Shown one piece after another: positions 337 through 61,848 of a DNA stretch of 64,000 bases. This stretch comes from Macrostomum lignano (Eukaryota): positions 124,001 to 188,000 of the forward strand of contig NIVC01001696.1 of NCBI GenBank assembly GCA_002269645.1, read 5' to 3'. Under the pieces are notes generated by a model. That model was not told the origin of the DNA, searched no databases, and saw only the letters and a program-made list of their open reading frames with translations. A program made the position numbers and the translations under genes. Every line of letters begins with the position of its first letter. Position 1 is the stretch's first letter.

Positions 337-2160
<1,824 letters not shown>

Positions 2161-17494: not shown

Positions 17495-20400
17495 TCACGG
17501 GCGATCATAGCAGTCGCACATGCAGGTGGAGATCTCTTCAATCCAGCAATTATCCTCTGAAAACGAAACGGATGCAATTCTGCTAAAAATCTGCTGGCTT
17601 TGATCATGAAATCTAACTTCACAGGATCAGAAGCTGAGTAACTTACGATACGGCATGCCGTGCAGGCCCTCCAGAGTGCTGGGCAGCGAATCAAATGACG
17701 TCATACCGGAGGCGGCGAGCCCGATGAAGTTGAGAACCTGTGAGTTTGGAAAGTGGTTGCGGTGAAAGCACTGTCCATTGGCATCAGAACTTGTCTGAAG
17801 TGAAACTCAAACCCAACTACACAAAGATTCGCATTGCTTACCTCTCCAACGGAGGTCTTCGCAGTCAGCTTCATCACGGAGCCACCAGATGCCGCAGCAA
17901 GGTAGTCGTACTCTCCCTTGTACACTCTGGGACCGCAAAACTGGCCGGTGCCGATCACGTAGAGTTTGATTTTCTTAGAAACCAGCAGAGCAGCGACATC
18001 GGCACTCATGTTTGCGTCTTTTGCAGCAGCGTCGGTGAACAGGATGAGCACGGAGTTTTCGAGTGCCTCCTTGGCTGCGTCCTCAATGGCTGACATGGCG
18101 TACTCGGGACAGTCGCCTCCGCCCGAAGGCGCGATCGCGTTCACGAAGCTCTGGATTGCGGACGCGTCGCTCGACCGGATCACATTCTTCACGTAGGGAT
18201 CGCCGTACCGGGATACCACGTAGTCCTTGAACACCGTGTTGTTCGCCATGATGGCGCTGATGTGAGTCCGCACGGCGAAGATCTCGGCACCCATTGAGCC
18301 GGTGTCGTCAATGATGAACCCCAGAGAGCCGACCCGCTTCCTGGGGCAGCCGTTGGGCGAGCCGCACACTTTGTTGCGCATCGTCACTCGCTTGTAGCCG
18401 AGCGGGCAGGGCGCTGAAGTGTCGAAGCGTCGATAATTAGCGCCAATCAAAAGTAAGGTATTTTCAACGTAATAGGTAAAGAAACTTACGTTCAATTGGC
18501 TTGCATTTGTGATGGATGACCCATTTGCAGCAGCCTGAAATATGATAAGAAGCAAATTTTCTATTATACAAAATTTAAAATTATAATCTTAGCAAAGTTC
18601 GACTCTGAAAAGAGAAAAACTCAACAAACTTACGTTCTGGCTTCATCTTTCGCATGTCGTCCAAGCAGCGAGGGAACGAACGCAGCGAGTACTTGCCGGC
18701 AGCAGCCAGGGCGAGGAAGTCAAGAACCTGCCGAAAAATGGTTTGATTGTTTTGTTTTTGTTTAAAGCTTATCTGGGATAAAATTAATCTAGGCAGTTGT
18801 TGCATTAATAGTGAGCTCAAAAGTAAATTTACCTCGCTAACTGATGTCTTTGCTGTCAGCGTCATGACGTCCCCACCAGAGGCAGCTGCGAGGTCGTCGA
18901 ATTCTCCCTTGTACACGCCGGAGCCGCAGAAGGTGCCAGTGGCGATGACAAACAGCTTCGTGTTCTTCGCCAACAACAGCGCCTTCACAGCGGCCAGCTT
19001 GCTCGCATCTTTTGCTGCAGCATCGGTGAACAAGACTAGCACAGAGTTCTTGCGGGCCTTCTTGGCCGCGTCCTCGATACCCGACATGGCGAACTCGGGA
19101 CAGTCTCCGCCTGCAGATGGCGAGATCGAGTTCACAAAGGACTGGATGACCGACTCGTCGCTGGATCGAATCACATTCTTCTTGTAGGGATCGCCGAATG
19201 TGGCCACCACGTAGTCCTTAAACACGGTGTTGTTGGCCATGATGTTGGCGATATGAGCGCGCACCGCGAAAATCTCAGCCGCCATTGAGCCCGTGTTGTC
19301 GATGACGAAACCTAGGGAGCCGTACTTGTGCTTCTTGCACGGACCGGGCACGCACACCTTCTTCTTCACCACAATATGTTCGAAGCCCTCCGGGCACGGA
19401 CAGCTCTTTGTCGGCGGCTCGATGCAGACGAGGTTCTCAATGCTGGTCTTGCAGGAGCAGTCTGAAATATGTTGGGAAAATCATTTTTTATGCCTATGCT
19501 TGTAATTGACATTTGGTATAACCTCAAATCAGAAGTGGCAACTCACTTCCATCGGCGATGGCTTTCAGATCTTCCAGAGTCGTCGGCATGCCGCGGATGA
19601 ACCGAATGCCGTACTTGGCAAAGTTCTTGATGTAGTTCATCACGAAGTCGACATCGGACTTGTCTGGGGTCCTGTAGATTGTTCCGTTGGTGGCGGTGGT
19701 CAGTCTAGAGAACTCGGCACCCATGCCGCAAAGATTTCCGGTCGCCATCACGTTAAGTCGGATGTTCTTGGACTCCAGCAGAGCCTTGACATCCGGCTCG
19801 AGAGCCAGATCCTTGGAGCTCGCGTCGGTGAACAGGAAGATGACGGAGCCGGGACTGAGACGGTCGGCCACATCCCGGATGCCGTGCATTGCCATCTCAG
19901 GACAGTCGCCTCCAGCGTTGGCGTTGATTGTGCTCACAAAGCTGTTGATGGCGGAAGCGTCAGTCGATTCGAACACGTTGGCCACGTAGGGATCGTTGTA
20001 GGTGCCAATCACGTACTTGTCGAAGATTCCGGATGTGGCAGCTGGAATGACAAGTTTCGACAATAATCACATACTCTTGTAATACGCTCGTACATTGGTG
20101 CATTTAGCAACTTCGACTTGGTAATCGGAAGATCACTGTCTGTAAAACTTACTGACAACAGCCTGAATGCTGGACTTTACCGACGCGATCTCCGTCCTCA
20201 TGCTGCCAGTGTTGTCCACAACGAAGCCGAGAGAGACGTTAAAGTACTCGCGGTCTCCGGGATCCACAATCTCGATTGTCCGGTTGAGGCCTGTGCAGCT
20301 GCATGACAGCCGCTTATCGTAGGTGCAGTTCTTGGATGGACAGCTGTCGCAAACGGGATCTGAGCGAATTACGGAGGGGATCGTTGTCGGTCAGTAACAG

Positions 20401-20517
20401 ATTAAATCAGTCTTCAACTATTGACTGAGCAGACAACAACAGAAACTTACCAAGCTGAGCAGCGACTTGCAGCACGAGGGCAGAGCCCACGATGAGAATG
20501 AGAGCGGACGCCTTCAT
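17495..20517 (-). CDS. Secreted triple-VWA protein, copy 3 (apparently intact)
   Basis: ATG at 20517, TGA at 17495-17497, splice sites conserved, exon 4 in frame (GGAGAA at the site frameshifted in copy 2). Confidence 0.88.
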
Positions 20518-21383
20518 GGAGGCTTTGTTGCTTAAAGATTTTCTTGCTTAAGGGTTTTCTTTTGAGTTGTCTCGATTCGAGTTCTCTCGGAGCCTTTGAC
20601 TCTGTGAGCTCCGCGATTGCCGCTTATATAGACATTTTGCGAGGCCATCTGAGTGTGTATTTTTGTTTTTTTCAATCCAGCTTGTTATCATCAACATAGG
20701 CGCAGTAATCTGCCCAACCACCCCCAGAGTTGTTTTCGTATTTTCAGGCTCACATCGAAATAATGAGGGGGCGTTGTCCCAAATGCAGACGCGATTGTTT
20801 TCGCGCCTCGGAGAAAAACAGCTGGACGATGTTTTTGCGAGACATTTCTATTGGATGGTAATAACAATAGCGGTGGCTGTTCTCTGCTTAGCATTAGAGA
20901 ACTGTCACGGGCTATATTTTCGTCTCCTAAACTGCCTGTGCATTGTTACTCGTAGTGTGCCATTGCTCTTCCATCTTCCATCTGAAGTGTATTTTTTGCT
21001 CTATGCTCAGACAGTTGTAAATATTCGTTGGGTCTATGCTATGCATTGTTATTGGGTAAAAGTAGCACCCGTTCTGTTGAGAAATAGCTCATTAACAACT
21101 AAAAGCTACACGAGTATTGATGTTTTTGAATCCATAGAAATTTTAGCAACCCTCGGATTCTGTTTACCGGCTCAAACGGGTGATGAGCTGCTGTAGTTTG
21201 GCAATAAATTTCTTTCTGTTTACACCTGAATCAACCTGTTAGTAAATCCTGCACTGCCAAGTAAACATGTTTTTGCAATTTTTATTTAACTGCTCTGCAT
21301 CAACTATTTACGGCTGATTCAATGGTTGTTCGCTTGTGGCATTGACCCTCATTCTCATTACGATCATTTACTTACCAAGAGAT

Positions 21384-21784
21384 CAGGGGCTTAGCCAGGA
21401 ATTTCCTACGGGGGGGACACACCAAGGTGAATTTCCTACGGGGGGGACACACCAAGGTGAATTTCCTACGGGGGGTATACACCAAGGTGAATTTTCTACG
21501 GGGGGGACACACCAAGGTGAATTTTCTACGGGGGGATACACCAAGGTGAATTTTCTACGGGGGGGGATACACCAAGGTGAATTTCCTACGGGGGGTATAC
21601 ACCAAGGTGAATTTTCTACGGGGGGATACATCAAGGTGAATTTTCTACGGGGGGATACACCAAGGTAAAAGTGCTATGACAGAGTCACATGGTAGCATGT
21701 ATAGCAACAAAGGGCAACAAAAAGTTTTGATCAGGCTCTTCGGGGGGGATACATCCTCCCTATCCCCCCCTCCCTACGCCCCTG
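21384..21784. mobile_element. hAT-type MITE (401 bp) with internal 30-bp tandem repeat
   Basis: Termini CAGGGGCTTAG / CTACGCCCCTG and a perfect 8-bp TSD CAAGAGAT (21376-21383, 21785-21792). About 9 copies of ACACCAAGGTGAATTTCCTACGGGGGGG-type units inside. Confidence 0.9.
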
Positions 21785-21821
21785 CAAGAGATTTTCTATT
21801 TTCACTTCCTAAAAGACAGAA

Positions 21822-23604
21822 GAGACAGGTGGGCGCCCACGAAAAAGACAGGGGCGCCCACCAAGAGACAGGGACAGGGGCGCCCACACTGAGACAGAGG
21901 CACCCACCAAGAGACAGAGCAGGGGCGCCCACCAAGAGACAGGGGCGGCCACCAAGAGACAGGGGCGCCCACCAAGAGACAGGGGCCGCCCACACGGATC
22001 GACAGAGGCGCCGACCAAAAGTCAGGGGCGGCCACCAAGAGACAGGGGCGCGCACCAAGAGACAGGGGCGGCCACCAAGAGACAGGGGCGTCCACCAAGA
22101 GACAGGGGCGCCCACCAAGAGACAGGGGCGCCCACCAAGAGACAGGGGCGCCCACCAAGAGACAGGGGCGCCCACCAAGAGACAGGGGCGCGCACCAAGA
22201 GACAGGGGCGCCCACCAAGAGACAGGGGCGGCCACCAAGAGACAGGGGCGGCCACCAAGAGACAGGGGCGGCCACCAAGAGACAGGGGCGCCCACCAAGA
22301 GACAGGGGCGGCCACCAAGAGACAGGGGCGGCCACCAAGAGACAGGGGCGCCCACCAAGAGATAGAGGCGCCCACCAAAAGACAGGGGCGCCCACCAAGA
22401 GGCAGGGGCGGCCACCAAAAGACAGGGGCGCCCACCAAGAGACAGGGACGCCCACCAAGAGACAGGGGCGCCCACCAAGAGACAGGGGCGTCCACCAAGA
22501 GACAGGGGCGCCCACCAAAAGATAGGGGCGCCCACCAAGAGACAGGGGCGCCCACCAAGAGACAGGGGCGCCCACCAAGAGACAGGGGCGCCCACCAAGA
22601 GACAGGGGCGTCCACCAAGAGACAGGGGCGGCCACCAAAAGACAGGGGCGCCCACCAAGAGATAGAGGCGCCCACCAAGAAACAGGGGTGCCCACCAAGA
22701 GACAGGGGCGGCCACCAAGAGACAGGGGCGGCCACCAAGAGACAGGGGCGGCCACCAAGAGACAGGGGCGCCCACCAAGAGATAGAGGCGCCCACCAAAA
22801 GACAGGGGCGCCCACCAAGAGGCAGGGGCGCCCACCAAGAGGCAGGGGCGCCCACCAAAAGACAGGGGCGCCCACCAAGAGATAGAGGCGCCCACCAAGA
22901 GACAGGGGCGCCCACCAAGAGATAGAGGCGCCCACCAAAAGACAGGGGCGCCCACCAAGAGGCAGGGGCGCCCACCAAGAGGCAGGGGCGCCCACCAAAA
23001 GACAGGGGCGCCCACCAAGAGATAGAGGCGCCCACCAAGAGACAGGGGTGCCCACCAAGAGACAGGGGCGGCCACCAAGAGACAGGGGCGGCCACCAAGA
23101 GACAGGGGCGGCCACCAAGAGACAGGGGCGGCCACCAAGAGACAGGGGCGCCCACCAAGAGATAGAGGCGCCCACCAAAAGACAGCGGCGCCCACCAAGA
23201 GGCAGGGGCGCCCACCAAGAGGCAGGGGCGGCCACCAAAAGACAGGGGCGCCCACCAAGAGACAGGGGCGCCCACCAAGAGACAGGGACGCCCACCAAGA
23301 GACAGGGGCGTCCACCAAGAGACAGGGGCGGCCACCAAAAGACAGGGGCGCCCACCAAGAGACAGAGGCGCCCACCAAGAGACAGGGGTGCCCACCAAGA
23401 GATAGAGGCGCCCACCAAGAGACAGGGGTGCCCACCAAGAGACAGGGGCGTCCACCAAGAGACAGGGGCGCCCACCAAAAGATAGGGGCGCCCACCAAGA
23501 GACAGGGGCGCCCACCAAGAGATAGAGGCGCCCACCAAAAGACAGGGGCGCCCACCAAGAGGCAGGGGCGCCCACCAAGAGGCAGGGGCGCCCACCAAGA
23601 GACA
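21822..23604. repeat. GC-rich 20-bp minisatellite GACAGGGGCGCCCACCAAGA (~85 units)
   Basis: Direct reading; variant units interspersed. Confidence 0.98.
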
Positions 23605-24961: not shown

Positions 24962-27197
24962 TCACTTTCGTCCGGCAATTTCCGGGTTGATGTCGTCCAG
25001 AGACAGGGTGCAGGTGGCTCGCATCAGTGACGGCTTCACAGGTAGGTGCTGCCGAGATGGAGGGTCCAATTTGTCGAAATAATGCTGCACAATGTCCCTA
25101 TCAGCTGGGCAGCTGTCTACAAACGCTGCGGTCTTGTACATGCGCTCCATGTACTGCTGAAGGAAGCGCAGATCCGGCGATGGAATGTCGTAATTGCGGT
25201 AAGCCTGCGGATGCGGAGGAACCACCGTTAACCTCACTTGACAGGCGAATACTAATTGAAATAATTGACAAGCATCAAGCATTATTCCCGCACCCAAATG
25301 CAGCGCACTGAAACAGACACTAAACACCTAACTGAAACCCACACTAAACACCTAACTGAAACCCAAACTAAACACCCAAGTGAAATCCAAACTAAACACT
25401 TAACTGAAATCCAAACTAAACACCCAAGTGAAATCCAAACTAAACACTTAACTGAAATCCAAACTAAACACCTAACTGAAACCCACACTAAACACCTAAC
25501 TGAAACCCAAACTAAACACCTAACTGAAACCCAAACTAAACACCTAACTGAAACCCAAACTAAACACCTAACTGAAACCCAAACTAAACACCCAAGTGAA
25601 ATCCAAACTAAACACTTAACTGAAACCCAAACTAAACATCCAACTAAAACCCAAACTAAACCCCAACTGAAACACACACTAAACCCCCAACTGAAACCCA
25701 CACTAAACCCCAACTGAAACACACACTAAACCCCAACTGAAACACACACTAAACCCCAACTGAAACACACACTAAACCCCAACTGAAACACACACTAAAC
25801 CCCAACTGAAACACACACTAAACCCCAACTGAAACACACACTACATGTAAACCCCAACTGAAACCCACACTAAATCCCAACTGAAACACAAACTAAAAAC
25901 CCAACTGAAACCCACACTAAACCCCAACTGAAACACAAACTAAACATCCTACCGAAACCCAAACTAAACACTTAACTGAAACCCAAACTAAACATCCAAC
26001 TAAAACCCAAACTAAAAACCCAACGAAAACCCACACTAAACCCCAACTGAAACACAAACTAAAAACCCAACTGAAATCCACACTAAACCCCAACTGAAAC
26101 ACAAACTAAAAACCCAACTGAAACCCACACTAAACCCCAACTGAAACCCACACTAAAACCCAACTGAAACCCACAGTCATAGCACCCAAACCCAATGACC
26201 AAATGGTCGCACAAAACCCCGATAAAAACCTTGGCAGCAATCCTGGCGTGATGCAGTTTGGGCATCAGCTGGCAATCCGCATAGCTAAGCTCCTGACCAA
26301 TCAGATACTGCACATCCGGTCTCTCAGCCAGGTAGCTGTTAATCTTAAACAGAGACGTTCTCAGCTTGGTATCGACTCCGCTCTTCAAGAAGATGTTCAA
26401 GCCAGTGTACAGATCTGCAAAGCAGCGCTCTGCGGCCGCTTCTTCGGGGCTTTCTTTCGGCAAAGCCAAGGCTGGACACCGCCACACGTCCATGAGCTGC
26501 TCAATTTCATCATTGGTGTCGCAGACCAGATTCTCCAAATCCGTGCCCTTGAGATCGCGACCTTTAATTACGCGAGCAACAGGCAGACGCTTGCCAACGT
26601 CAAGGGCTTGATAGGCTTCGGGTGGTAGGTCGGGGTTGACAGTAGTGACAAATAGGTTGACAATCTTTTTCTCGGCCAATAGATAGAAAACCATGAACCA
26701 TTGCTGGCTGATGGGGCAGGGGCCTTTGTCTTCGCGGCCGATTGGGGAAACCTGAAGTGGTAGAAAAAAACACAATTTTTTTTATATAACAATAAGCTGT
26801 TTTTTATTTTACTTTAAAATTATGTACATCCTCAGAGTTAGAAAAAGTCCATTGAACTATTAAACTAACAATAATTAAAATACTAAGCGAGAAAGCAGAT
26901 TAAAGTATTACTACAACTGAAATATGAACATTAAATGAAAGAATAGTAATAGTAAGTGCAAGTATTAAGTTATTGAGTTTAACAGTGTTTAATGTGGATG
27001 TGTCATGTGGGTAGATTTAATAACAGCTTCAAATCATGCCCAGGTTTGAATATTATTTATTTGAAAGTCATAATTTAGATTATGATATAATCAACTAATA
27101 AACAAGAAATGAATATAAAGTACATAAGAAATCTTTACAACAAATATAATGGGCATCTCACCTTAATAAAGAGTTCGATAACTGGTTTGTCATCCAT
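24962..27197 (-). CDS. CLIC: Chloride intracellular channel (CLIC/EXC-4 family), 3 exons, ~266 aa
   Basis: Exons 27197-27162 (MDDKPVIELFIK), 26751-26230 (..GPCPISQQWFM..VTTVN..ELSYADCQLMPKLHHARIAAK) and 25204-24962 (AYRNYDIP..FVDSCPADRDIVQHY). All phase 0, GT-AG. Motifs match CLIC IELFVK, CPFSQ, LADCxLLPKLH, FDIP and CPxDxE. Confidence 0.92.
25308..26174. repeat. Intronic 23/24-bp AC-rich minisatellite (CTGAAACCCAAACTAAACACCTAA then CTGAAACACACACTAAACCCCAA)
   Basis: Fills most of CLIC intron 2; the unit shifts from 24 to 23 bp along the array. Confidence 0.95.
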
Positions 27198-28410: not shown

Positions 28411-28756
28411 CAAGACAGACACCCAATTCGTCAAGACACAGACACCCAATTCGAGACACAGACACCCAATCAAGACACAGACACCCAATTTAAGACACAG
28501 ACACCCAATTTAAGAAACAGACACCCAATTCAAGACAAAGACATCCAATTCAAGACACAGACACCCAATTCAAGACACAGACATCCAATTCAAGACACAG
28601 ACATCCAATTCAAGACACAGACATCCAATTCAAGACACAGACACCCAATTCAAGACACAGACATCCAATTCAAGACACAGACACCCAATTCAAGACACAG
28701 ACATCCAATTCAAGACACAGACACCCAATTCAAGACACAGACACCCAATTCAACAC
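28411..28756. repeat. 20-bp tandem repeat CAAGACACAGACACCCAATT (~16 units)
   Basis: Direct reading. Confidence 0.95.
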
Positions 28757-30397
28757 AGGCAGTCGCAGAACGTGATAGATACATACATGTACTTTACATT
28801 AACTGTTTTTAAAGCAGCAGTTCTCTAATATCAATAAATACCTTGATACTAATGCAGTTGACACTAAAGATTTCAAACATGAAAAACTCTCTTTACATGC
28901 ATACATGTACACTTCCACACTACTCATTAGATTAAGCTAGGATTATGATTTTAGAGCGAATGAGCTCAAATAGAAGCTTAGAATAGCTCTGAGTCTAAGT
29001 TTTCAGTTGGTCTCTGGGCTGTTTACAATTTGGTTTGGTAAACAATAAGAGTAGAACTGTTTGGTGAGGGCGCCCTGCTGCGGCTGTGCAAAATACAGCC
29101 CTAAGCTCGTATAAAGCTTTGTAAGACTAAAATGCAACTCTCAAGTGTTGAGCAAACTTGAAGCAGGAGACGGCGAGGGAGAGAGCTTGACTAGCGAACT
29201 CCCCACCCATTGCTGGACTTATATTTTCTGCTTCTAAAAGAGTACTAAACCTCTATATAGTCATAATAGCCGCGCGTGCTTTTTTATTTTTCTTTCTCAG
29301 CAAGCGCCATCATATGATTTAGCATTGGCAGAAAACGTCCTTCAAATGAACTCAGAGAGAGAGAGAGAGAGTGAGAGAGAGAGGGAAACGGAACTTATTG
29401 TAAAGTCTAATTCTTTTCTATTGCTAACGCCGCTGAAAAAGAAAGATTTCTGTATTTCTTTTCAACGACGGGATCGAGAGGGGAGAGAGGAAGAGAGCGA
29501 AACGGTGGTGTACAGACAGCGTCTCTTGGGGCGGGTAGATGACCTGCTGTGAGGGGATCAAAGCCTAGAGAGTTAGCCATACTCTCTTAGCGGTTGCATC
29601 GTAAAAGAAGAAGCAGAATTGAGAGGAGAGTGAAGCGGAAGGATTTCACACTGGGGGGGGGGGATCAGAAGGGGAGAGGAGGGATAGAGAGAAAGCAGCT
29701 GTATTCTCTCTCCCAGTCCCATGGCAGCGGGCAGAAACTGTTCAACCTCTTTCCCATGAAGCGTAGACGAGAACTGAAGCCCGCTGTTCTCCTATCGATC
29801 GACGTGAGCTCACTCCCTGGGCCCTGTTTTCGACGCTTGTCGCGCACTTAAGCTGCGGCTGCAGAGTGCGGAATGGCCTGGATGGCCGTCGGGGCGAGGA
29901 GCGGGGTAGAGCGGGTAGAGAGAGACTGCCTGGGTCTGAGGGGAGGTGGTCGCCGGTTTTTAGTCTACGCACGTTGGCGTCGGGGGTTTCGGGTTGGAGG
30001 ACCAACCCCCACCATCCCCTCCCCCCCAGCGGTTGTTCAGTGGCCGCCCCCAAAGGCGAGGAAAAGAAAACCCATGGCGGAGTGGAGGCTGCTGTTTCGT
30101 CAGTGCAGCGAGTGCGACCAATACCAGCCTGCCTAAAAAGGCTAATAGCTATAGTAGCCTAGACAAAAATCTATATTGCCGATCAAAACAGTGCTTCTGA
30201 GCCCCATGCTCACTCACCACCCCTGTCTGATTTGAGGGCGATTGAATTATAATATATAACTGGAAAAAATTGTCACTGCCATTGTTCAACCCTGAACTGA
30301 AGCTGCAGTCGCACAACCAATCATCCATTGGATTTTGTATACAACAGAGCTCATTGCTCCATTGTACAACTCGCCGACTACTTACCGATAAGTCGAC

Positions 30398-31418: not shown

Positions 31419-32061
31419 GTGAGATATTGTACTGTGTAACATTATTGCTTAATTTACATGAATCTGTTCTACTATTGATATTTTATCGCAGTTTTATCGG
31501 TTAAAAAGTCACAGGGAATCTTCCATAAAATATTACGCTGAATCTCACAAATCCTACATCGAATCTCTTTGTTACTTGTTAATCTTTGGGGCGAGTTGTT
31601 GCGTAAAGTCAAAGCGTGTGTTCCTTCTACATAGAAATTGGTTCCCTCGCACCCAGCAGTCTGTTGCTTTGGCCCGAATATGGAGGAAAGATGGAAGGAA
31701 AGCGGAAAAAGGTTAAAGTGAGCGAAAATCCCGTCTATGGCCGTTAATCTTTCAATCCTCGACGCCGCTGGGTAAAAAGCGCTAACTTCTTACCTCCCAC
31801 CAAACGATTCCCCTTGCAAGAAAGATATCTACTGCAGGTCAAGCTAGAGTGTAGAAAGCAAGGATCTGGGGAAGCAGTGATAGCAGATATGGGGTTTGCA
31901 GCTTCGATAGATGCTCGCAAGATGCAGGCAGAAGGGATCTAGCAGGGGACCGCTAGCTTGCGCTGTATAGTATAAGTATCATAAATGGACAGAAGGATAC
32001 TACACTAGATTTCTGTAGCTAGTTCACGAAATTTTTACTTGTGTGTTATCTCAACGACTGC

Positions 32062-32865: not shown

Positions 32866-33615
32866 CTCACCGCCTCTATCCCCATCTCCCCGCCTCCATC
32901 CCATCTCCCCGCCCCCATCCCATCTCCCCGCCTCCATCCCATCTCCCCGCCTCCATCCCATCTCCCCGCCTCCATCCCATCTCCCCGCCTCCATCCCCAT
33001 CTCCCCGCCCCATCCCATCTCCCCGCCCCCATCCCATCTCCCCGCCCCCATCCCATCTCCCCGCCCCCATCCCATCTCCCCGCCTCCATCCCATCTCCCC
33101 GCCCCATCCCATCTCCCCGCCCCATCCCATCTCCCCGCCCCCATCCCATCTCCCCGCCCCCATCCCATCTCCCCGCCTCCATCCCATCTCCCCGCCCCAT
33201 CCCATCTCTCCGCCTCCATCCCCATCTCCCCGCCTCTATCCCCATCTCCCCGCATCTATCACCATCTCCCCCGCATCTATCCCCGTATCCCCGCATCTAT
33301 CACCATCTCCCCCGCATCTATCCCATCTCCCCGCATCTATCCCCATCTCCCCGCCCCCATCCCATCTCCCCGCCCCCATCCCATCTCCCCGCCCCCATCC
33401 CATCTCCCCGCATCTATCCCCATCTCCCCGCATCCCTCCCCATCTCCCCGCATCTATCCCCATCTCCCCGCATCTATCCTCCTCTCCATGCATTTATCCC
33501 CATCTCCCCCGCATCTATTCCCGTCTCCCCGCATCTATTCCCGTCTCCCCGCATCTATCTTCATCTTCCTGCATCTACGAGTATCTTAATCTCCCCGCCT
33601 CATCCCTATCTCCAC
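32866..33615. repeat. Pyrimidine-rich ~18-19-bp repeat (CCCATCTCCCCGCC[T/C]CCAT)n; G-rich on the minus strand
   Basis: Direct reading; the minus strand has dense GGG/GGGG runs. Confidence 0.95.
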
Positions 33616-36600
33616 ATTTATCTCCATCTCCTCGCCTCGATTCCCATAATTTTATCTCCCACTTTAGCAACTGAGCTTCCGTACAAGGGAAAGTCATTTC
33701 ACTTTCATATTGAGAGAATTATCGTTATATTGTCATGCGGTGAATCCTACTGACCGGCATTTGGGATTTGAATCGCGCAAAGGTGAGGGATTTAGCTTCA
33801 AGCCGGGGGCCATAAGCTCCCAGATTGGCACTCTGTTTATTCCCCATTTTTCATCCCCTCCTCCGTCGGGGTCGGGGTTCCCTCTTACGATTCACCCCAG
33901 GCAGACAGGCCTTATCAACGCAGCACAGCAGAGTAGTCTTTCAGCTGCCTCTTCTCTCCCTTCTGATTAGCCCGCTTTTTTGCGTATATTCCAGCTGCCT
34001 CCCGCACTGAATTGCATCGGTGCTAAATTATTTGGTAGGGTCGGGTCTTCGTTGGGGTTGAATATTTCCTAGCTGGTATATCTATATCGCTTAGTGTGTA
34101 CCCCTGGTTAAGCTGTCGGCGCACAAGCGACTGCCCTTTTGCAGACCGGTTCCACGATTTTGTTTGCATGGCAATGCTTTAATTTTGGAGGGTGGGGCGT
34201 AGCCCAGTAGTCTGGGCCGGCGCTCTGATGTGCTAGCGGCCCAGGCTCGATTCCAAGTGCAGTCACATTAATTTGAGGCTAAATTGGAATCTCGGCTTGG
34301 CTCTGCTCGTGCAATTAACATTTTTTTCTCCGGCTTTTAAGTTTACGATGGCATAATAAAATTATATATACTGTCTGTATGAACGTCATGTTTCTAAAAA
34401 AACAGAAATAAATAAATTATTTCACTCCTTTGTGTACGTTTATGTTAACATCATAAGTATTTACATGCACTATACTATCGTATACTATACTATACTATTG
34501 TTTACAAGTAATTGCAATCGTGAAGGACACAGGGCTGTTTCTAAAAATAGATCAATCGATAACTTTCAGTACCTAAAATGTGCATCCATTTGTACTAAGC
34601 CATGATGAATATATGATGAAAGTACTACATGTACTTCAAAAATGGAGGCTGTTGCAAGTTAACAAGTTGCAATGCAAAAATTATTGCTTTTTATATACGT
34701 CTTTGTAGTTGGATTGGAGTCAACTACATATAGGTTATATCTACCTCTTAGTTGCCATCAATTACATTCGTTAGGTTTATTTTATTTTATCTTATTTATC
34801 AAATTTTCTGGATTTGAAGCCTATTGGGCCATAGGTAGGAAATAATTGTCTTCAAGATTTAAAAGACTAATTTAAGATGACGCCCAGATGTGCTATGATT
34901 AAAAATCGATACCCTTGACCTGAGACAATCGGGGGTTACAAGATCTTTGTAACGCACAAGTACATCATTGCCGTTGTCATGGAGCTTCAAGAGCATCCAC
35001 ATGCATTCTTTTCTTCATGCATGACTTCACGGAAAGCCTCTGTATTAGACGCCACCTAGAAAACCGTATTGGGAAAAAGGTTGTTATAACAAGAACAGCA
35101 ATTCTCTAGTAATTGCATTGTAAAAATGTAAAGATAACACGCTCGTTAGTAGTTATTTTAATGCAAGAAAAGCTTAGAAGCCAGAGACAGAGACAGACAG
35201 GACAGGGGGCGACGGTTAGACTTGCTTTTGTCTTGTAGTTTTTTCAGTTTTACACTTTTATTTCCATATTTGGCTTGTTAAATTTCTGCTCAGGGGGAAT
35301 TGCAAACATTAGAAAAATTTCGCGTATCGGTGCGTGGGCAGTATCGGTATTGATTTTGTTGTGATCGATCTCACTGATCCGATTATGATTGTCGCATGTT
35401 ACTCGTAACCTGAGAAGTATTTAGCTTTCTGGCTACTCAAGTACAAGCGGGGGTTACTCAAGTGTCCAAGCTAGAATTTTGTGACTCTATACTTATTTAA
35501 TTAAGATCTATACTCAAAGTAGCTTATATTCCCTTTTAATTGATTGTAGTTCCGCTAAATGACATCCGGTCAGTAGTCTTAATTCACTGGCTTTACCCCG
35601 CTTTGCCACGCAGGTCCCACCAGTCCAAAGGCGATGCCGCATGGGATTCACAGAGGACGCCTGTTTGGCCTGTGCTTTGGCCTAAAAAAATCCCGGGCAT
35701 GAGCCACTGCACTGCGCTATACAGACTACTGGCGTACAAGACGATAAGTAGGGTGATGCAAACTTAGACTGAAAAAGCTTTTTGCTTTTTATTTTGTTTA
35801 TTTATCGATGTAAGAGTAACTTACTTACATCGATTTTTTTGACTCTAATGCAGCACTCACTTTACCTGACATTGTATTTCTTTTGTTTTTTTGAAAACAT
35901 GAGCGTCTGATTCTTCTTTGTCATTTTGTCATTCCTAATTGCTGACCATATTCAAGGCATTATGTACGGATTTATTCTTGTGTGTGCATCAAAAATGCAA
36001 TTTTCATGACGACGCAATTATTATTTCTAAATACTATAACTTACGTTTTTTCGCACCATTTCAAATGGCTAATACGAGCGTAGTCATCCAGTTGAATCGA
36101 TGTGTAGTGAAACATCCATGACAAGTCAATCATCGAATAGTCATTGTCCAAGACAGTTGAATATCGTACTTTATTGCGCTGCTTTGAAGCTCTGCGCATG
36201 CCCTCTAAATGTCGCATTCTCCTCCTCCGTCGTCTGTACAGTTTGTTAAACTTTTGAACCGAGTTTTTTTGTTTTAATTCAACCCGTTATTTTAGAATGC
36301 CATGTTGGAGGCGTCTTCCATGGCCTTAATAAGATCCTCTCAAATCCCGGCTTTATAATTTTGTTTTTTTTCTAACTCCCCTTGGTTTGTTATTACAGGT
36401 TCCGTGACCTTAACAGGTTTTGTTTGTTCCTTACTGTTTGTGTTTCTCGCTTTTAACCCTTTTTGAAATTTGGCATGTGCATGCAATTTGATAAGATAAT
36501 ATCACGATTGTTGGCCCCCGATGACACCGAAAGACCTTGAGATATAAATTCAATATTAGTTCCCGCTTCATGCACGTGTTTCTATCTGTCATGATTTGAC

Positions 36601-40293: not shown

Positions 40294-42188
40294 TTGTAGT
40301 TGTGGTTTAGTAACGGAACTGAGTTGAGCGTAAAACAATTAAAGCGGACTGACAAGCTCTTGAACATATAATCTGATAAAAGTGAAAGCAATAACTGAGT
40401 GAATAAACTACATGTACGCTCGTATATTTTACAGCATGAAATGAAAACAACTGACAACCATAGGCTCGTATTTTTGTTCATTTTTTAAACGGAAGTGGCT
40501 TTTTCTGTAGCTGTTTCTCGATTTAAACAATAAGCAGTTTTTCCATTTGCTTGTTTCAATTCGAATGCCTCTCAGGTGGGCTACTGCCTACTGCGCAGAC
40601 ATGCTGCAGCCGATAATACGTCAGCCAATTCGTCAGTGTAGAATAATTTCCCAATCAACAAACCTCGAACGATGAACAATCCCCTCACAAACGCGATTTC
40701 GTCAGGTGTCTTCTGTCAGCAGATTTGTCTGCGAAAGCAGACTGAATGGCCTTGGAAGTATGCTGGAATCGAATTGAACAGCACGGTTTCCAAATGAAAC
40801 GTTTACATATGAATTCTGTCTACAAATGGATTTTTGTAAAATTGGAAGGATTTAGAAACCTAGAAGGACTTTAAAAAAGGTTCATTATGGTTTTTTGGTA
40901 CCATCGAAAAAGGGAACGGAACTTTAAAATTCCTCATAATCTATAAAAATAATTTCACAACCTAAATTTTTAACGTTAAGGAAAAAGCTTGCCTGTGAAA
41001 TTTTATGCTTTCTATGTTCTGATTTAGGTTCAGAAAGCCAAATTTCGTTAAAAAATTCGTAAAATACGTAGGATTTTTCAGTTGATGAAAAGGACAGATC
41101 GTCCTTTACGACCTTTACGTAACGACATCATACGTCGGCTGATTAACTTCGGTGATTTGTAAAAGTACATATCTGTCATGGACGTCGATAGTTTTGTGTT
41201 TGATCCGATAGACAGGTGCACAAGTTTGCCGATCATATTTGATGTTGGAAGAATACTACTATACATAGGCTGGTAGGACAGCCCAAAATTAAATCAGTAT
41301 CGTAGAAAATGAAACTCGAACACTTCTCTAGAGGCCACGCAGTGTAATTTCAATTTAGTACTTCCTCTACTCAATTGGATAATTCTCTAGAGTATTTAAA
41401 AACCCGTAAAAGTTTTTAGTTTCAGGAGAATTCCCTTTGGGCCTTCCTACATGCTTAGAGGGACCAGTGCATACTGCCAGAAGTGAATCCTCACTGCAGA
41501 CATGCGAAGCCAATGTGAGTAATTAAAAACTGTGCAACTAGGGGCTCGATTCCAATTTTCGAATGGCACGGCTGTGGACTAATCCGTTGCCCTCACTCGT
41601 TCGATCGACCGACTGTGCACTACAATTCGGTTTCGAAAAAGTCCGGAAAGAAGCCTGCGAGAAGGTTGGCTGGCAGCCCAATTTTCTCCACTGCCCTGAT
41701 GGGAGTTTTCGGCCGCGAGAGGAACCTTTCACTGAGGTGGGGGAGGAGCTTGAAAAGTTGCAACCAATGGCTAGGAAAAAGCTTTTCGTACAACGCCGGC
41801 AGCGTTCTTGTTGTCGAAAGATTTCGCTGATTATACAGTCTTTCTGAATCGAAGGAAGCTAAAGCAGGTATGTTAGATAGGCAACCAACATGGGAAAAGT
41901 TCTGGACCCAAACCCACGACCCCCGCCGTGCAGCTTGATGGTTGAGCGAAAAAAATAACATAGCCATGGCTCCGCCCTGCTTATTAGCTCACGAAAAGCC
42001 AGCCCGTAAGGTGATGAACTTCGACTGCAGCAAATCAAAGCACTGCGCGAACTTTCATTGGCTTCCATCAGCCCGAAGCTACAGCCAAGAACATTGATAT
42101 ACTTCTGCTATTTGCAAAAGCTCTTGCCCACAAAGACTAAGTCGATCTGAATTAACTCTGGAAGTAACTCGATATCATAAGGTCAGCC

Positions 42189-47084: not shown

Positions 47085-47170
47085 TAGTATTGCTTTTGTC
47101 GTGCTATGTGTAACAGCGGGCATGCAAAACGGAACGGGCCATAGAATTCTATAGCCAAGTGTTTGAGTTA

Positions 47171-48303
47171 CACTCAGCAACATTTAAAACGCAACACTCT
47201 AACTAGAAGAAAAATCAACTCATTCAGAAGAGTCAAAGCGCATAGTCTATGGTTCAAATCGAGCTTCAGAAACGCGTGTAGCCTCCTCTCGCAAGTAACA
47301 GGGCGTTGACTCGACGTGGCATTCCAGGTGCAGCTGGTCCTTGAGTTCGCTGACAGCTGCTGCCCGGTGCGCCGGTGCATTATCGTCCTGCAGTATGCAG
47401 TTTGCGACGCCACCAAAGTGGTTGTTAACAAAAGGGAGCAGATGCGTCTGCAGCAAACGAGCGTACTCATCGCCGTTCACGTTTGCGTCTAAGAAAACCA
47501 GCTGGGTCCTGCCTCGCATTGAAATCCCTGCCCACACGTGTACGGAGGGTCCCTGCCCATCGCAGCTTTGCACGTGCTGCTGCAGAAGCTCTTGCCGTGG
47601 CTCACGCCAGACGCGAATTCGACCATCACTGCGAAAAAGACGAAACCGACTCTCGTCTGTAAAGATAACGCGCTGCCACTGTCCTTGCCGCCAGTGCGCC
47701 CGCTGCATGGCCCACAGTTCCCTGTTAGCGACATGTGCAGGACTCAGGCGCGGCCTCCTCCGCATTTTTCTTGACCGCAATCCTGCAGCGTGAATCCTGC
47801 GGCGAATCGTCTGCGCGCTGAGAACGTTGCCTCTGCGGCTTCTCTCTGCCCACATCAATCGCAGGAGTGTGGCAGGCAGTGTGGGGTTTCCACGCACTAT
47901 TCTCAGCAGGCGTCGATCTGCCCTCGCTGTTGTACTGCGAAGTTGGTGAAGCACCGTACCTTTTCTCGCGTGAGCCACGCTTCCAGTGGCTCTGCTCTTC
48001 TGTAGCAGACGTAAAACTGTTGAAGGCGACCTCCCGAAGTGGTTCGCAACTGTTCGAAGAGTACAACCTGCTTCCAACATTCCGACTGCTCGCCATCTTT
48101 CCGCGTCTGTCATCTGTTGAACCATTCTCTCAGCTGGATCACTCTATCTGAAAACAGTCCATAGTCATCGCCCTGTTACTTGCGAGAGGAAGCTACACGC
48201 GTTTCTGAAGCTCGATTTGAACCATAGACTATGCGCTTTGACTCTTCTGAGTGAGTTGATTTTTCTTCTAGTTAGAGTGTTGCGTTTTAAATGTTGCTGA
48301 GTG
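47171..48303 (-). mobile_element. Tc1-like transposon (1133 bp, 135-bp TIRs) with an internal deletion
   Basis: TA|CACTCAGC...GCTGAGTG|TA; near-identical TIRs 47171-47305 and 48169-48303. Confidence 0.93.
47247..48125 (-). pseudogene. Tc1 transposase ORF truncated before the catalytic Glu
   Basis: Paired-like HTHs, VIFTDESRF, VWAGIS and LQDDNAPAH are present. The WPxxSPDLNPIE motif is missing; the frame runs into the TIR. Confidence 0.88.
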
Positions 48304-51186
48304 TAACTCGGGGAAGGCAAGCCATAGACAACTCGATCTGTCATGCAATATGGAAAGGTGAGCCGGAATAGAAGGAACAGTTTGAGTTTTATTTACAGCA
48401 ATAATAAAAACAGACATTAATGAAGCACATTTTAAGTCACAAATTGAAACCATCAAATATAAAAAGGTCAACTCTTCGTTAGCGTATTCGCTTCTGGCGT
48501 CGACATCCATGATCCCCAAGGTAGCAAGTTTGATCGTAAAGAGCAAACCATCCACTGCTCGATCAATTGTTTTAAGGCTCACATGCGGCTTGTCAGGAAA
48601 GCTTCCAACCAGCTTCTCAGCCATTGAATTTAGCGTTAGAAAGGGATTTTGATGCACCTCTTGTTGCAAAAAAATTGCATCTCTGCGTCCACTACGCAGA
48701 TATTCCTAATAAAACTGAAACATCCGTCATCGACAGTCCACGATGCAAGGCGGCTATGATACGCTGTCGATCGCGTACAGAAATTTGCGGTGCCGTTTAT
48801 ACGACCGTTAGAAAATAAAAGCGTCTTGCCTCTGTGAAAAGCTCAAATCGTTCCTTCTAGGTCGAGGTCGAACCCTATGGGCCGTTCCGTTTTGGATGTC
48901 CCCAGTTCCACATAGCATGACAAAAGCAGTAGTAGTTCCCGGGTTCCAAGTTTCCAAATTTCATTGTCAAATAACTTTGGCCAAAGATCGCAGTAAAAAA
49001 ATCAATTTAAACAACTTTAAATTTTCATACACTTCAAGTAGCTATAGATTTCGTAGTTGAAAGGAAGATTGTCAGTGTAATGCTCCACTTCAATGTATTT
49101 CATTGTTGATGGCCGGTCACCGTACACTGAACGAATGAAAAGCTCCAGACTCTTCAAAATTGCACAGCATTCCTCTAGATTTCATCCGAGTTTGGTAATT
49201 TGAGTTTTTTTGAATAAGGATAAAGCATCGAGGGAATTTGGTTGATTTGAGAATTCGTTTTGAAGTTTCTTGTTATAACTTTGCATCCTGAAATTCTACC
49301 TACATGTAGTATGCGCTATATCGCAATCTTATTGCTGAACTTGAAAAAAAACTTGGAAAATGTTCAAGCTTCATAATATAATTACTTTTTTTCAAATAGA
49401 GAAAATGCATAATGAAATTTGTAGCTGAATTACTGTTGACAAGTTATTTCATTAGATAGTTATTCCATTCTCATTCGATAATTCAGGATCGACATCAGAG
49501 CTAGTGTCAGTAATTTTTAATGGAAGAATACTACAGCCAAAGCCCACTAGTCAAAATCACTATTCAATAAGTTCACTACTTGCTGTGGACCATGATTCTA
49601 ATCGATTTTCGGTGGAAGATGTCGAAGACACTCTTCAAGACCAGCTGGATCGGCGTGACCCGTAAGTGCAGGTGCAAATTTAAAAAATTGAAAAAAAAAT
49701 CTTGGGCACGTTTGATGACAGGAGTGGGCATCCAGAGGGCTCGTATATTTGTGGTAGATGGGCTACCACGATGATTTAATTTTTCTAACTTTGAACTACT
49801 AACTCACCGGAACACACACCTTTGTCGTCCCGTTCTTACGTCTGGCCCCCACGTCTGGCCCATCCTCTGGCCTCTGTCCGCCATTCTCTGTCCTGCATGT
49901 TTGTTGCCCCATTTTTGTTTCTCTTTGCTTCCCATCTGTTGCCCAATGGCCTGCCCCATCTTCTGCCCCAGTGGGTGCCCCAATGCGACGGCAATAAGTT
50001 GTGCATGCTCATATATAATCACCGTAATGAACTTTCTGTTACCGACTCTTGGTCTGGCTGTTGTTTTTATTAACTTTTGTTAACCAACTTTTACTCATCC
50101 CGCACCTCGGCTCCGCCGGATATCTTGCTCGTAGCGGCTCGGCTGAAGGCGATTATTAAACCAGAAAATAAACAACGAACTCTACTACTTATTCATTAAT
50201 CAATAAATTAGCCAATAGCATTATCTTAAATACTTTTCCCGCGGGGCGTACGAGCTAAAACAACCAATTGTTCTCAACTCTAAGCGAGCTCTGAAAAACT
50301 ACCATTCTGTAATGCGTAAATTACGGTGGTGGCAGCGATACGCTACTCTTAGTAAGCTTCAACGCATATCGACGTACATTGAACTCCGGTGTCTGTGGAC
50401 CCAAACTTGAACGACCGTGCCTATTTACGACCGCTCGACCGCGACTTCAACTACCATCCCCCCCCGGAATTGAGGACCCCGGCAGACGGAGTAACCCTGT
50501 AGAATTTTCTTGAGATTCGAATGCGCGATCTTCCGGATTAATTCGTGCGAACTCAACGCAGGCGGCAATACGAATTTGCTAGCTGCCCCAACTTCCAAAT
50601 TTGTTCCGCAAATTTGGAAAATTTGGAAAACCACCTGCACTTCATTATTTATACTACGTCATGTATGACTCATCGTATGCCATAAGAATTAATTAGTCCA
50701 CGACAAATAAATCGTAAAAATATATCTTTTTCTAGAAGTAAACTATCTTGGATTTTTGTTTATATCACAGGATAATCAATTCATTAGAAACTTAATCAAA
50801 AATGTTCAATACGGTTTAGTTAAATTTGCACGCTAAAATATAGGTCAAAGTAAGCACTGCTTGATTTTCTTACTGTACTTTTGTCTTCTTTTGTCTAAAA
50901 CTTTTAGCACTGCACCAAAATAGGGGTGTGTGCCAACTAAATACGCTAGAACATGTAGGGTAGGTACAGTATGAATTAGTAGATAAAACGCATATATGTA
51001 GAATACAGAAATGAGTAGTCGATATTTTCACTGTGCAGGTAACATCCGTAAAAATGTTTCGCTAAAGGGATACATTACATGCTCATCAAAGAAGAATATA
51101 TCGTCAAACTATTTCTGCATGGATTTAAAGCGTTTGTGTTTAGCCAAAAAAATTGACACAGCATTTGCTTTAAAAAATGGAACAGG

Positions 51187-61236: not shown

Positions 61237-61848
61237 TTTAACCATATATTACTCAGCAGAGTCAAAGACTACACATAATACCATGCAGACTGTGGCAAGC
61301 AAATCAATATATAGTTTTCATTCGAATTTTAGCTTTTCCTCAACAACCGCTGTATATCGAAATTGACCTAAAAAATCACACGATCTTCGAGTTTTACGTC
61401 CTGTACATTATTATATATACGACGACGTACATGTACATGTACCAGGGGGTTATTAAGAGCTTCGGACCCTATAAGACATTGACGTGTTGATTCTTAACAG
61501 ATCTTATCTAATCTTCTTGGGTTGCTGCGCAAGTTGCAAGAACGAGCAAGATTTTCGCTATGATAATAATTAGGTAAACTTACCAGATCTGGGCGATACA
61601 TCGTATAAGATTTTAACTTTTAATTATATATCTTTTTACATAGCTTCGAATCGCATATTTTATTAAATTTTTGTCCCATTTTGCCATAAAAAATAAAGAA
61701 CACTTTGGCCAAATGAATGACAATGACAAAACAAATGTACCTCCTTTCTTAGAAGATCCTGCAAGAACCGAGCAGATTTAGAAGATATGCTAAGAATGGC
61801 ACAGAGAGACAAAGATCTGCTAAGTTTGAGAAACAGAATGTCCTCTAG

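What the first reader, a model, noticed from the sequence alone, without database searches (positions are those of the whole stretch)
25842..25849. TACATGTA caught as a TA-duplicating insertion inside a repeat unit: a probable transposon excision scar
Seen: neighbouring units read GAAACACACAC-TA-AACCCCAACT, but this one reads GAAACACACAC-TA-CATG-TA-AACCCCAACT, so the empty site is visible next door. Known: Tc1/mariner elements duplicate TA, often end CA...TG, and leave footprints retaining terminal bases, including TA-CA/TG-TA types. The Tc1 at 47171-48303 has exactly TA|CA...TG|TA ends. Inference: an element inserted here and excised.
Basis: partly seen in the sequence, partly recalled or inferred. 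Interest (0 to 1): 0.72.

Follow-up and report, generated by a model that had tools for sequence, protein, structure and literature searches.

The report
Transposon excision scar in flatworm minisatellite
One unit of an intronic tandem repeat in the flatworm Macrostomum lignano carries the 6-base scar that a TA-inserting "cut-and-paste" transposon leaves when it jumps out; the mechanism is ordinary, but such scars are unusually common in the roughly 180 kb of this genome that I sampled.

Summary
At 25842-25849 one unit of a 23/24-bp minisatellite reads CAC-TA-CATG-TA-AAC. The five preceding units are otherwise identical and read CAC-TA-AAC, as do all the other units of the array. The TA is the only TA in the unit.

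The window is Macrostomum lignano (assembly GCA_002269645.1). The array lies in the last intron of a CLIC-like gene. The same scarred unit is present in a paralogous contig, where it has been duplicated, so it is real, old and inherited.

The footprint reading is supported by further evidence:
- TACATGTA is the most over-represented of all 136 TA-N4-TA words in about 178 kb of this genome (30 observed, 3.6 expected). In five unrelated loci it is 11 observed against 2 expected.
- A second TA-to-...TACATGTA indel separates paralogs at 34613.
- A parallel word, TACGAGTA/TACTCGTA, is enriched 6-fold. It shows an exact TA-to-TA-CTCG-TA paralog polymorphism and its own in-repeat example at 33576.
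- Resident TA-flanked elements carry the matching ends: CA...TG at 47171-48303 and CGAG...CTCG in locus L004.

Not shown: which family made the scar. The resident Tc1-like copy is a deleted, non-autonomous one.

The mechanism is known. The abundance of scars in this genome is the modestly new part.

The parts
25842..25849 (.). TACATGTA, read as TA + CA + TG + TA: the putative excision footprint, a net insertion of 6 bp at a TA.
25829..25857 (+). The 29-bp repeat unit that carries the footprint (CTGAAACACACACTACATGTAAACCCCAA).
   Evidence: The same unit, with one substitution, occurs twice in paralog L001.
25714..25828 (+). Five identical 23-bp units (CTGAAACACACACTAAACCCCAA). They serve as 'empty-site' comparators.
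25307..26173 (+). Minisatellite with a 23/24-bp period and about 37 units. It fills most of the last intron of a CLIC-like/GST-C gene.
26224..26757 (-). Upstream exon of the CLIC-like gene (P0001 residues 11-188, 98% identity).
24965..25207 (-). Last exon of the CLIC-like gene (P0001 residues 186-266, 99% identity).
47171..48303 (-). Resident Tc1-like element of 1133 bp. Its ends read CACTC...GAGTG and its terminal inverted repeats are at 47171-47311 and 48163-48303. It is internally deleted and non-autonomous.
47169..47170 (.). Left TA target-site duplication of the Tc1-like element.
48304..48305 (.). Right TA target-site duplication of the Tc1-like element.
47247..48125 (-). Truncated transposase ORF of 292 aa. 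It contains HTH_38, HTH_Tnp_Tc3_2 and the first two-thirds of a DDE_3 domain. The ORF runs into the terminal inverted repeat, and the region of the third catalytic residue is missing.
34613..34632 (.). 20-bp insertion, TGATGAAAGTACTACATGTA, at a TA that is uninterrupted in paralog L003. It ends in TACATGTA, and its filler copies the left flank ATGATGAA.
33576..33583 (.). TACGAGTA inside a degenerate 19/20-bp repeat. Neighbouring units read GCATC-TA-TCTT; this one reads GCATC-TA-CGAG-TA-TCTT. It belongs to the second footprint class.
36073..36082 (.). TACGAGCGTA, an 8-bp TA-duplicating insertion relative to paralog L003. It belongs to the third recurrent word.
40409..40424 (.). TACATGTACGCTCGTA: two recurrent TA-flanked words abutting and sharing a TA.
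61428..61441 (.). TACATGTACATGTA, a tandem double footprint. It is consistent with re-insertion at a footprint TA followed by a second excision.

Best explanation
The extra CATGTA at 25842-25849 is most likely the excision footprint of a TA-specific cut-and-paste transposon of the Tc1/mariner superfamily whose ends read CA...TG.

Inferred sequence of events:
1. The element integrated at the single TA of one minisatellite unit and duplicated the TA.
2. The transposase later cut it out with staggered breaks, which left the terminal nucleotides of the element on the flanking DNA as short 3' overhangs.
3. End-joining sealed the break as TA-CA-TG-TA.

The scar lies in an intron and is presumably neutral. 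It was inherited by at least two paralogous copies of the locus and was copied again when the array expanded in one of them.

Shown: the exact TA-to-TACATGTA difference against neighbouring units; its presence in two contigs; the strong genome-wide excess of this word; a second, independent footprint class with the same behaviour; and resident elements with matching ends.

Inferred: that an element was ever present at this site, the cut stagger, and the repair route.

Not resolved: whether the agent was a relative of the resident CACTC-ended Tc1-like element with a 2-nt stagger (2+2 retained bases; my estimate about 0.5), or an unseen family with CATG termini and a 4-nt stagger, whose self-complementary overhangs would religate uniformly to TACATGTA (about 0.3).
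For: The word sits at the only TA of the unit, and 37 in-array comparators lack it. It is present in paralog L001, twice within a duplicated 214-bp block, and the corresponding part of the array is absent from the short L003 array.

TACATGTA occurs 19 times in the window against 0.86 expected. Of the 32 ACATGT hexamers, 19 lie inside TACATGTA. In about 178 kb of non-redundant sequence it occurs 30 times against 3.55 expected, which ranks it first of 136 TA-N4-TA classes with p = 4e-18. In five unrelated loci it occurs 11 times against 1.96 expected, p = 7e-6.

A second indel with an empty-site comparator lies at 34613. Its filler is templated from the flank.

The parallel class TACGAGTA/TACTCGTA occurs 13 times against 2.0 expected and 11 against 1.6 in the unrelated loci. 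It shows an exact TA-to-TA-CTCG-TA insertion in L001 relative to L003 and the window and an in-repeat case at 33576.

Resident TA-flanked elements have the required ends: CA...TG at 47171-48303 and CGAG...CTCG at L004 15932-16971.

Established mechanism: Tc1/mariner ends are cut 2-3 nt inside the element on one strand, and end-joining leaves footprints of the first or last 2-4 nt between duplicated TAs (PMC2170065, PMC6943129, PMC2874221). TACATGTA is cited as a Tc1 footprint in C. elegans (PMC3520976).
Against: No allele with an element at this site, and no true empty allele of this very unit, was available. The comparators are neighbouring units.

Only one CA-ended element was found in 245 kb, and it lacks the third catalytic residue.

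PMC3520976 describes TACATGTA as a rare Tc1 footprint in C. elegans, so its uniformity here needs either a particular repair bias or cohesive CATG ends. No CATG-ended element was found.

A few TACATGTA copies lie inside repeated elements and were therefore spread by copying rather than by separate excisions: window 60685 matches L005 2475, and L001 8441/8844 resemble L008 16066.

The +1 flank is C in 45% of cases against 17% background. This could be a target preference, but it could also mean the real motif is longer.
Confidence: 0.8

Rival explanations
1. TACATGTA is a functional palindromic protein-binding site, enriched by selection, as proposed for Phytophthora (motif-1, MYB-related factor) and as known for Iroquois-class homeodomains. 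On this reading the copy in the array is incidental.
For: The word is abundant, palindromic and absent from coding exons in the window. In Phytophthora the same 8-mer lies upstream of about 12,000 genes, and the authors of that study rejected a footprint origin (PMC3520976). A 2024 paper reports an oomycete MYB-related factor that regulates effector genes and names this 8-mer in its abstract (PMC11134190; listing only, not read). Three window copies lie in a divergent intergenic region at 27.2-30.4 kb.
Against: Selection does not explain a clean 6-bp TA-duplicating insertion in one unit of an intronic minisatellite. It does not explain the indel at 34613 with templated filler. It does not explain the non-palindromic parallel class TACGAGTA/TACTCGTA, which behaves in the same way. 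Conservation among paralogs (4 of 6 sites intact at 3-4% divergence) is what neutrality predicts.
Confidence: 0.05
2. The insertion is an unrelated small event, from replication slippage or from repair of a random break with templated or untemplated filler, and it matches the footprint word by chance.
For: Minisatellites are prone to indels. Other small indels of 3-20 bp separate the paralogs.
Against: CATGTA is not a copy of adjacent sequence, and there is no CATG anywhere else in the array. The chance of this exact product is about 3e-5. It is the only off-length unit of the array. The same word is 8- to 12-fold enriched genome-wide.
Confidence: 0.05
3. An element did insert at the TA, but it was lost by a host deletion or recombination between its ends rather than by transposase-mediated excision.
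For: Paralog copy 2 at 12680 lacks an 8-bp TA...TA segment that four other copies have. That difference is most simply a microhomology deletion between TAs.
Against: Host deletions would give heterogeneous remnants, not the same 2+2 (or 4-nt) word 30 times.
Confidence: 0.05
4. The insertion is an assembly or long-read sequencing artefact.
For: None specific. The assembly comes from long reads (my own knowledge).
Against: The same 29-bp unit, followed by the same diagnostic units, is present in a second contig and twice there.
Confidence: 0.01

Closest known systems
Tc1 and Tc3 excision footprints in Caenorhabditis elegans (Plasterk 1991; van Luenen et al. 1994; cited through PMC2874221, PMC2170065 and PMC3520976)
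   Same: TA target, TA duplication, and element ends reading CA...TG. The non-transferred strand is cut about 2 nt inside the element, so the flanks keep CA and TG. TACATGTA is a documented product.
   Different: In C. elegans it is described as a rare product. Here it is a uniform and very abundant word. The host is a flatworm, and the cut stagger of the local family is untested.
Minos (Drosophila hydei) 6-bp footprint, described as repair by heteroduplex formation (Arca et al. 1997, listed in the references of PMC6943129; details are from my own knowledge because the paper is not held)
   Same: The second class seen here, TA-CGAG-TA / TA-CTCG-TA, is what I recall as the Minos footprint type: four terminal nucleotides of a CGAG-ended element plus the TA. 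The insertion is 6 bp, as at 25842.
   Different: The resident CGAG-ended element (L004 15932-16971) looks mariner-like rather than Minos-like. For the CATG word, a 4-nt model needs CATG termini, and none were found.
Sleeping Beauty canonical footprint TAC(A/T)GTA (PMC6943129)
   Same: The same superfamily and the same logic: terminal nucleotides retained between duplicated TAs.
   Different: Sleeping Beauty has a 3-nt stagger and leaves a 5-bp net insertion. TACAGTA (7 observed, 9 expected) and TACTGTA (20 observed, 10 expected) are not clearly enriched here.
Phytophthora 'motif-1' TACATGTA (PMC3520976; PMC11134190)
   Same: The identical palindromic 8-mer, highly over-represented in non-coding DNA.
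   Different: There it is interpreted as a transcription-factor site and reported as conserved. Here there is direct indel evidence for creation at TA sites. The organism is a metazoan, not an oomycete.
Stowaway/mariner footprints in plants (abstract of PMC4561436, seen)
   Same: According to the abstract, excision of these elements usually leaves a small duplication plus short sequences from the element ends.
   Different: A different host and different families. I found no report of a genome-wide word excess.

Membership tests
Tc1/mariner excision footprint | Lies at a TA dinucleotide that is duplicated. | tested here: met
   CAC-TA-AAC versus CAC-TA-CATG-TA-AAC. The TA is the only one in the unit.
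Tc1/mariner excision footprint | The bases between the two TAs equal the terminal 2-4 nt of an element's ends. | tested here: met
   CA + TG match the ends of the resident element at 47171-48303. Which family acted is not established.
Tc1/mariner excision footprint | An empty site, or a site filled with the element, exists at the same locus in another allele or strain. | tested here: inconclusive
   The only comparators are neighbouring units and a paralog whose array lacks that part. True empty-site comparators exist for sister cases: 34613 versus L003 and L001 13660 versus L003 and the window.
Tc1/mariner excision footprint | The same word recurs at unrelated TA sites more often than chance predicts. 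| tested here: met
   30 observed against 3.55 expected, rank 1 of 136. 11 observed against 1.96 expected in unrelated loci.
Tc1/mariner excision footprint | A transposase with the appropriate cut stagger is or was active in the host. | not testable with these tools
   This needs an excision assay or mapping of the cleavage positions.
Tc1/mariner transposon (element 47171-48303) | TA target-site duplication and terminal inverted repeats. | tested here: met
   TA on both sides. The arms are 147 nt and 98% complementary; the six outermost positions of each arm are palindromic flank.
Tc1/mariner transposon (element 47171-48303) | Transposase with paired helix-turn-helix domains and a complete DDE/D triad. 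| tested here: not met
   HTH_38, HTH_Tnp_Tc3_2 and a partial DDE_3 domain are found. The two aspartates align with the Sleeping Beauty transposase. The ORF enters the terminal inverted repeat at about residue 271, so the region of the third residue is deleted. This is a non-autonomous family member, not an intact element.
Transcription-factor palindrome (Phytophthora motif-1 type) | Positional bias towards promoters and conservation above the neutral rate. | tested here: inconclusive
   There are too few sites. 4 of 6 comparable sites are intact in paralogs, as neutrality predicts.
Sleeping Beauty-type 3-nt footprint | TA + 3 nt + TA words are enriched. | tested here: not met
   TACAGTA 7 observed, 9.1 expected; TACACTA 7 observed, 7.3 expected; TACACGTGTA 0 observed.

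The most novel reading that the evidence does not exclude
In Macrostomum lignano, Tc1/mariner excision scars may have accumulated to roughly one TACATGTA per 6 kb, plus a comparable number of TACGAGTA/TACTCGTA. They are the most over-represented GC-containing TA-N4-TA words in the sampled sequence. Scaled to a genome of about 0.76 Gb (size from my own knowledge), that would be on the order of 10^5 scars. Scars would then be a quantitatively important source of small insertions and a readable fossil record of DNA-transposon activity. They could also be a possible seed for palindromic protein-binding sites, which would reopen the question of whether the abundant TACATGTA motif of oomycetes began the same way.
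Probability: 0.4. Interest if true: 0.6.

Novelty: new member of a known kind. Interest (0 to 1): 0.42.

Why it matters
A single footprint is textbook biology. What is useful here is that the tandem repeat supplies its own empty-site control, and that the same reasoning extends to the surrounding genome. Two footprint words dominate the TA-N4-TA spectrum of about 180 kb of M. lignano DNA, and they appear as paralog polymorphisms.

If this holds genome-wide, it has three uses:
- It gives a simple way to measure past cut-and-paste activity, and to infer the end sequences and cut stagger of families that are now extinct.
- It suggests that M. lignano, a transgenesis-capable regeneration model, has or recently had active Tc1/mariner transposases that might be harnessed.
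- It is a caution for motif discovery, because an over-represented palindrome in non-coding DNA can be a mutational by-product rather than a selected binding site.

Tried and rejected
- Oomycete origin. The literature hit for TACATGTA and the long intron-poor ORFs suggested an oomycete. This was rejected when the neighbouring protein matched M. lignano at 98% identity and L002 matched the window at 100%.
- Exact-protein look-ups of window ORFs (ASC channel, transposase, amidase) found nothing.
- The paralogous locus of the Tc1 insertion site could not be reached, so presence, absence or scar at 47169 could not be scored. The ASC cluster members have no contigs. The ankyrin paralog L004 is too divergent outside coding sequence.
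- A wrap-around alignment of arrays to perfect arrays was uninformative. It was replaced by anchor spacing.
- Two alignments used wrong coordinates and were redone.
- A search for CATG-ended or other CA-ended terminal-inverted-repeat elements found only the known one.
- Alternative footprint words were not enriched: TACACTTA (the 4-nt type for CACT ends), TACGCGTA (2+2 for CG ends), TACGATCGTA (3+3) and the Sleeping Beauty-type words.
- A hairpin (palindromic-nucleotide) origin, as in hAT-type excision, was rejected because the flank CACACTA would give TAGTGTG, not CATG.
- The older primary papers (Plasterk 1991, Arca 1997, Zagoraiou 2001) are not held. A search for the Minos footprint words found nothing relevant.
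- No paper on M. lignano transposon footprints was found.

Full report
**Observation.** The word TACATGTA is at 25842-25849. It lies in a tandem array at 25307-26173 with a 23/24-bp period. Parsing the array unit by unit shows five identical 23-bp units, CTGAAACACACACTAAACCCCAA, at 25714-25828. They are followed by one 29-bp unit, CTGAAACACACACTACATGTAAACCCCAA. The difference is exactly CATGTA, placed at the only TA of the unit, so TA becomes TA-CATG-TA. All 37 units read ACTAAA at this position. Apart from the regular 12+12 half-units, the +6 unit is the only off-length unit. There is no other CATG in the array, so the inserted bases were not copied from adjacent sequence.

**Organism and context.** The ORF next to the array matches a Macrostomum lignano protein at 98% identity. 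One of the three contigs that encode this protein (L002, NIVC01001696.1 of GCA_002269645.1) is 100% identical to window 14962-37197. The window is therefore flatworm DNA. The protein is a CLIC-like/GST-C protein. Its exons map to 26757-26224 and 25207-24965 on the minus strand, so the array fills most of the last intron, which is about 1 kb long.

Two paralogous loci, L001 and L003, are about 96-98% identical to the window. In L001 the scarred unit and the two diagnostic units that follow it are present twice, inside a duplicated 214-bp block (L001 11349 and 11563). L003 has a short array of about 16 units that lacks this part. The insertion is therefore real. It was a single event, it is older than the split of the two paralogs, and it has since been copied by array expansion.

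**The resident element.** The element at 47171-48303 is 1133 bp long. It has 147-nt inverted arms that are 98% complementary, its ends read CACTC...GAGTG, and TA lies on each side. The target was itself palindromic (GAGT-TA-ACTC).

Its 292-aa ORF has HTH_38, HTH_Tnp_Tc3_2 and a partial DDE_3 domain. It aligns with the catalytic domain of the Sleeping Beauty transposase, including the first two aspartates. The ORF runs into the terminal inverted repeat at about residue 271, and the stretch that should hold the third catalytic residue is missing. It is a deleted, non-autonomous copy.

Its QDDNAPAH motif has alanines at the positions equivalent to 246 and 248 of Sleeping Beauty. According to PMC6943129 this places it outside the K248 group, with the Tc3, Minos and Bari-type elements. 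That assignment is my inference from the alignment. No other copy of this element was present in the 245 kb I held.

**Is the word special?** TACATGTA occurs 19 times in the window against 0.86 expected from dinucleotide shuffles. Of the 32 ACATGT hexamers, 19 lie inside the full 8-mer. The flanks are unrelated to one another.

To avoid ascertainment bias I fetched five unrelated M. lignano loci, L004-L008, totalling 116 kb. They hold 11 copies against 1.96 expected from order-3 Markov simulations, p = 7e-6. In about 178 kb of non-redundant sequence the count is 30 against 3.55 expected, and the word ranks first among all 136 TA-N4-TA classes, p = 4e-18.

A few copies lie inside repeated elements and were therefore spread by copying. 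Window 60685 matches L005 2475, and L001 8441/8844 resemble L008 16066.

**Independent cases with an empty site.**
- At 34613 the window has 20 extra bases, TGATGAAAGTACTACATGTA, at a TA that is uninterrupted in L003. The insert ends in TACATGTA, and its filler repeats the left flank ATGATGAA. This is the signature of templated repair of a double-strand break.
- A second word class behaves in the same way. TACGAGTA/TACTCGTA occurs 13 times against 2.0 expected and 11 against 1.6 in the unrelated loci. L001 13660 reads GGA-TA-CTCG-TA-GCT where L003 reads GGA-TA-GCT and the window also lacks the insert, which polarises it as an insertion in L001.
- At 33576 a degenerate 19/20-bp repeat reads GCATC-TA-CGAG-TA-TCTT where its neighbours read GCATC-TA-TCTT.
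- A TA-flanked element with CGAG...CTCG ends lies at L004 15932-16971. It is 1040 bp long with terminal inverted repeats of about 200 nt, and its terminal sequence and a C-terminal protein remnant look mariner-like.
- A third word, TACGAGCGTA and its complement, occurs 7-8 times against about 0.1 expected. It is an 8-bp TA-duplicating indel against L003 at 36073, and it abuts TACATGTA at 40409. I cannot derive its exact structure from known cut patterns.

**Mechanism.** The established facts are these. Tc1/mariner elements insert only at TA and duplicate it. The ends are cut 2-3 nt inside the element on the non-transferred strand (PMC2170065). End-joining of the donor site leaves the first or last 2-4 nt of the element between the TAs; for Sleeping Beauty the result is TACAGTA or TACTGTA (PMC6943129, PMC2874221).

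A CA...TG-ended element with a 2-nt stagger leaves CA and TG overhangs that cannot pair. Fill-in and ligation then give TA-CA-TG-TA. PMC3520976 cites TACATGTA as a rare Tc1 footprint in C. elegans.

The CGAG class matches what I recall of the Minos 6-bp footprint, in which 4-nt overhangs form a heteroduplex that is repaired either way. This is from my own knowledge, because the paper is not held.

This leaves two versions for the CATG word. In the first, 2+2 bases come from CA-ended elements such as the resident one. In the second, 4 nt come from an unseen family with CATG termini, whose self-complementary overhangs would religate uniformly; that would explain the uniformity and abundance of the word. 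The evidence bearing on the choice is as follows:
- TACACTTA, the 4-nt product expected for CACT ends, is not enriched (2 observed, 3.2 expected).
- TACGCGTA, the 2+2 product expected for CG ends, is absent.
- No CATG-ended element was found.

The choice stays open.

**Other features.** The base just outside TACATGTA is C in 45% of cases against 17% background. Tandem forms such as TACATGTACATGTA occur at 61428. Both fit a target preference of the ATG-TA-CAT kind with re-use of footprint TAs, but that is inference.

**Rivals.** A selected protein-binding palindrome, as proposed for the identical 8-mer in Phytophthora (PMC3520976; see also PMC11134190), explains neither the TA-duplicating indels nor the non-palindromic sister class. 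Chance or slippage is excluded by the exactness of the word and its recurrence. Host deletion of an inserted element would not give a uniform remnant. An artefact is excluded by the second contig.

**Verdict.** Two reservations remain: no element-filled allele was seen, and the agent family is not identified. The phenomenon is a known kind. The part that may be new is the degree to which footprint words are over-represented in this flatworm genome. I found no such report in the held literature.

Noticed in passing
window 33576-33583; L001 13660; 13 sites in about 178 kb: A second TA-flanked word, TACGAGTA/TACTCGTA, is enriched about 6-fold. It shows an exact TA-to-TA-CTCG-TA paralog polymorphism and an in-repeat example. 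It matches the four terminal bases of a CGAG-ended element.
   Followed up: yes
window 20083, 36073, 40415, 42888, 44869; L004 3199; L006 5665; L007 20379: The 10-mer TACGAGCGTA/TACGCTCGTA occurs 7-8 times against about 0.1 expected. It is an 8-bp TA-duplicating indel at 36073. Its structure (CGAG+CG?) is not explained by simple 2-, 3- or 4-nt models. The copy at 42888 lies inside the continuous coding ORF of the ASC/ENaC channel gene.
   Followed up: partly
L004 15932-16971: A 1040-bp TA-flanked element with ends CGAGGGGTGTCCCAAAAGTTCCCGG..., terminal inverted repeats of about 200 nt, and a remnant of a mariner-like transposase C-terminus. It is internally deleted.
   Followed up: partly
window 46341-47084 and 47085-48934: A nested transposon cluster. 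A 744-bp element with 150-nt inverted repeats (98% complementary) and a helix-turn-helix-like ORF fragment abuts a second inverted-repeat element (arms 47085-47149 and 48870-48934). The Tc1-like copy sits inside the second element. A TACATGTA lies 6 bp to the left of the first element.
   Followed up: partly
window 2204-21669: A unit of about 7.4-7.5 kb is present three times in tandem. Each copy carries a VWA-domain gene, and at least two carry a 23-bp minisatellite (7449-7822 and 14934-15283).
   Followed up: no
window 331-2160: An (ATCT)n microsatellite of about 458 units at 96% purity.
   Followed up: no
window 21399-23604, 28415-28757, 32048-33552, 44458-44613: An unusually high density of minisatellites with 19-30-bp periods. 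One is an 88-unit array of a G+C-rich 20-mer. Arrays make up about 11% of the window, and their lengths differ widely between paralogs.
   Followed up: no
window 57554-61239; L005 1920-2940: A large, degenerate inverted-repeat structure (arms about 450 nt, 85-90% complementary) is related to a repeat in L005. A TACATGTA at 60685 is shared by both copies, so it is part of the repeat family.
   Followed up: partly
window 57997-58030; 27 sites in 180 kb: TAAATTTA (27 observed, 6-11 expected) and TAGGCCTA (8 observed, about 1-2 expected) are also over-represented TA-N4-TA palindromes. One TAAATTTA sits at the centre of a 34-nt near-perfect palindrome. They may be further footprint types (AA...TT and GG...CC ends), or a composition effect.
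   Followed up: partly
window 12680 versus 5196 and 20083; L001; L003: One of five paralogous copies lacks the 8 bp between two TAs (TA-CGCTCG-TA becomes TA). By parsimony this is a microhomology deletion that erased a TA-flanked word, so such words can also be lost.
   Followed up: yes
L008 8665-8751: An 83-bp TA-flanked hairpin-like element with CA...TG ends (TA-TA-CATACGGTACTAG...GTACCGTATG-TA-TA). It may be a miniature inverted-repeat element.
   Followed up: no
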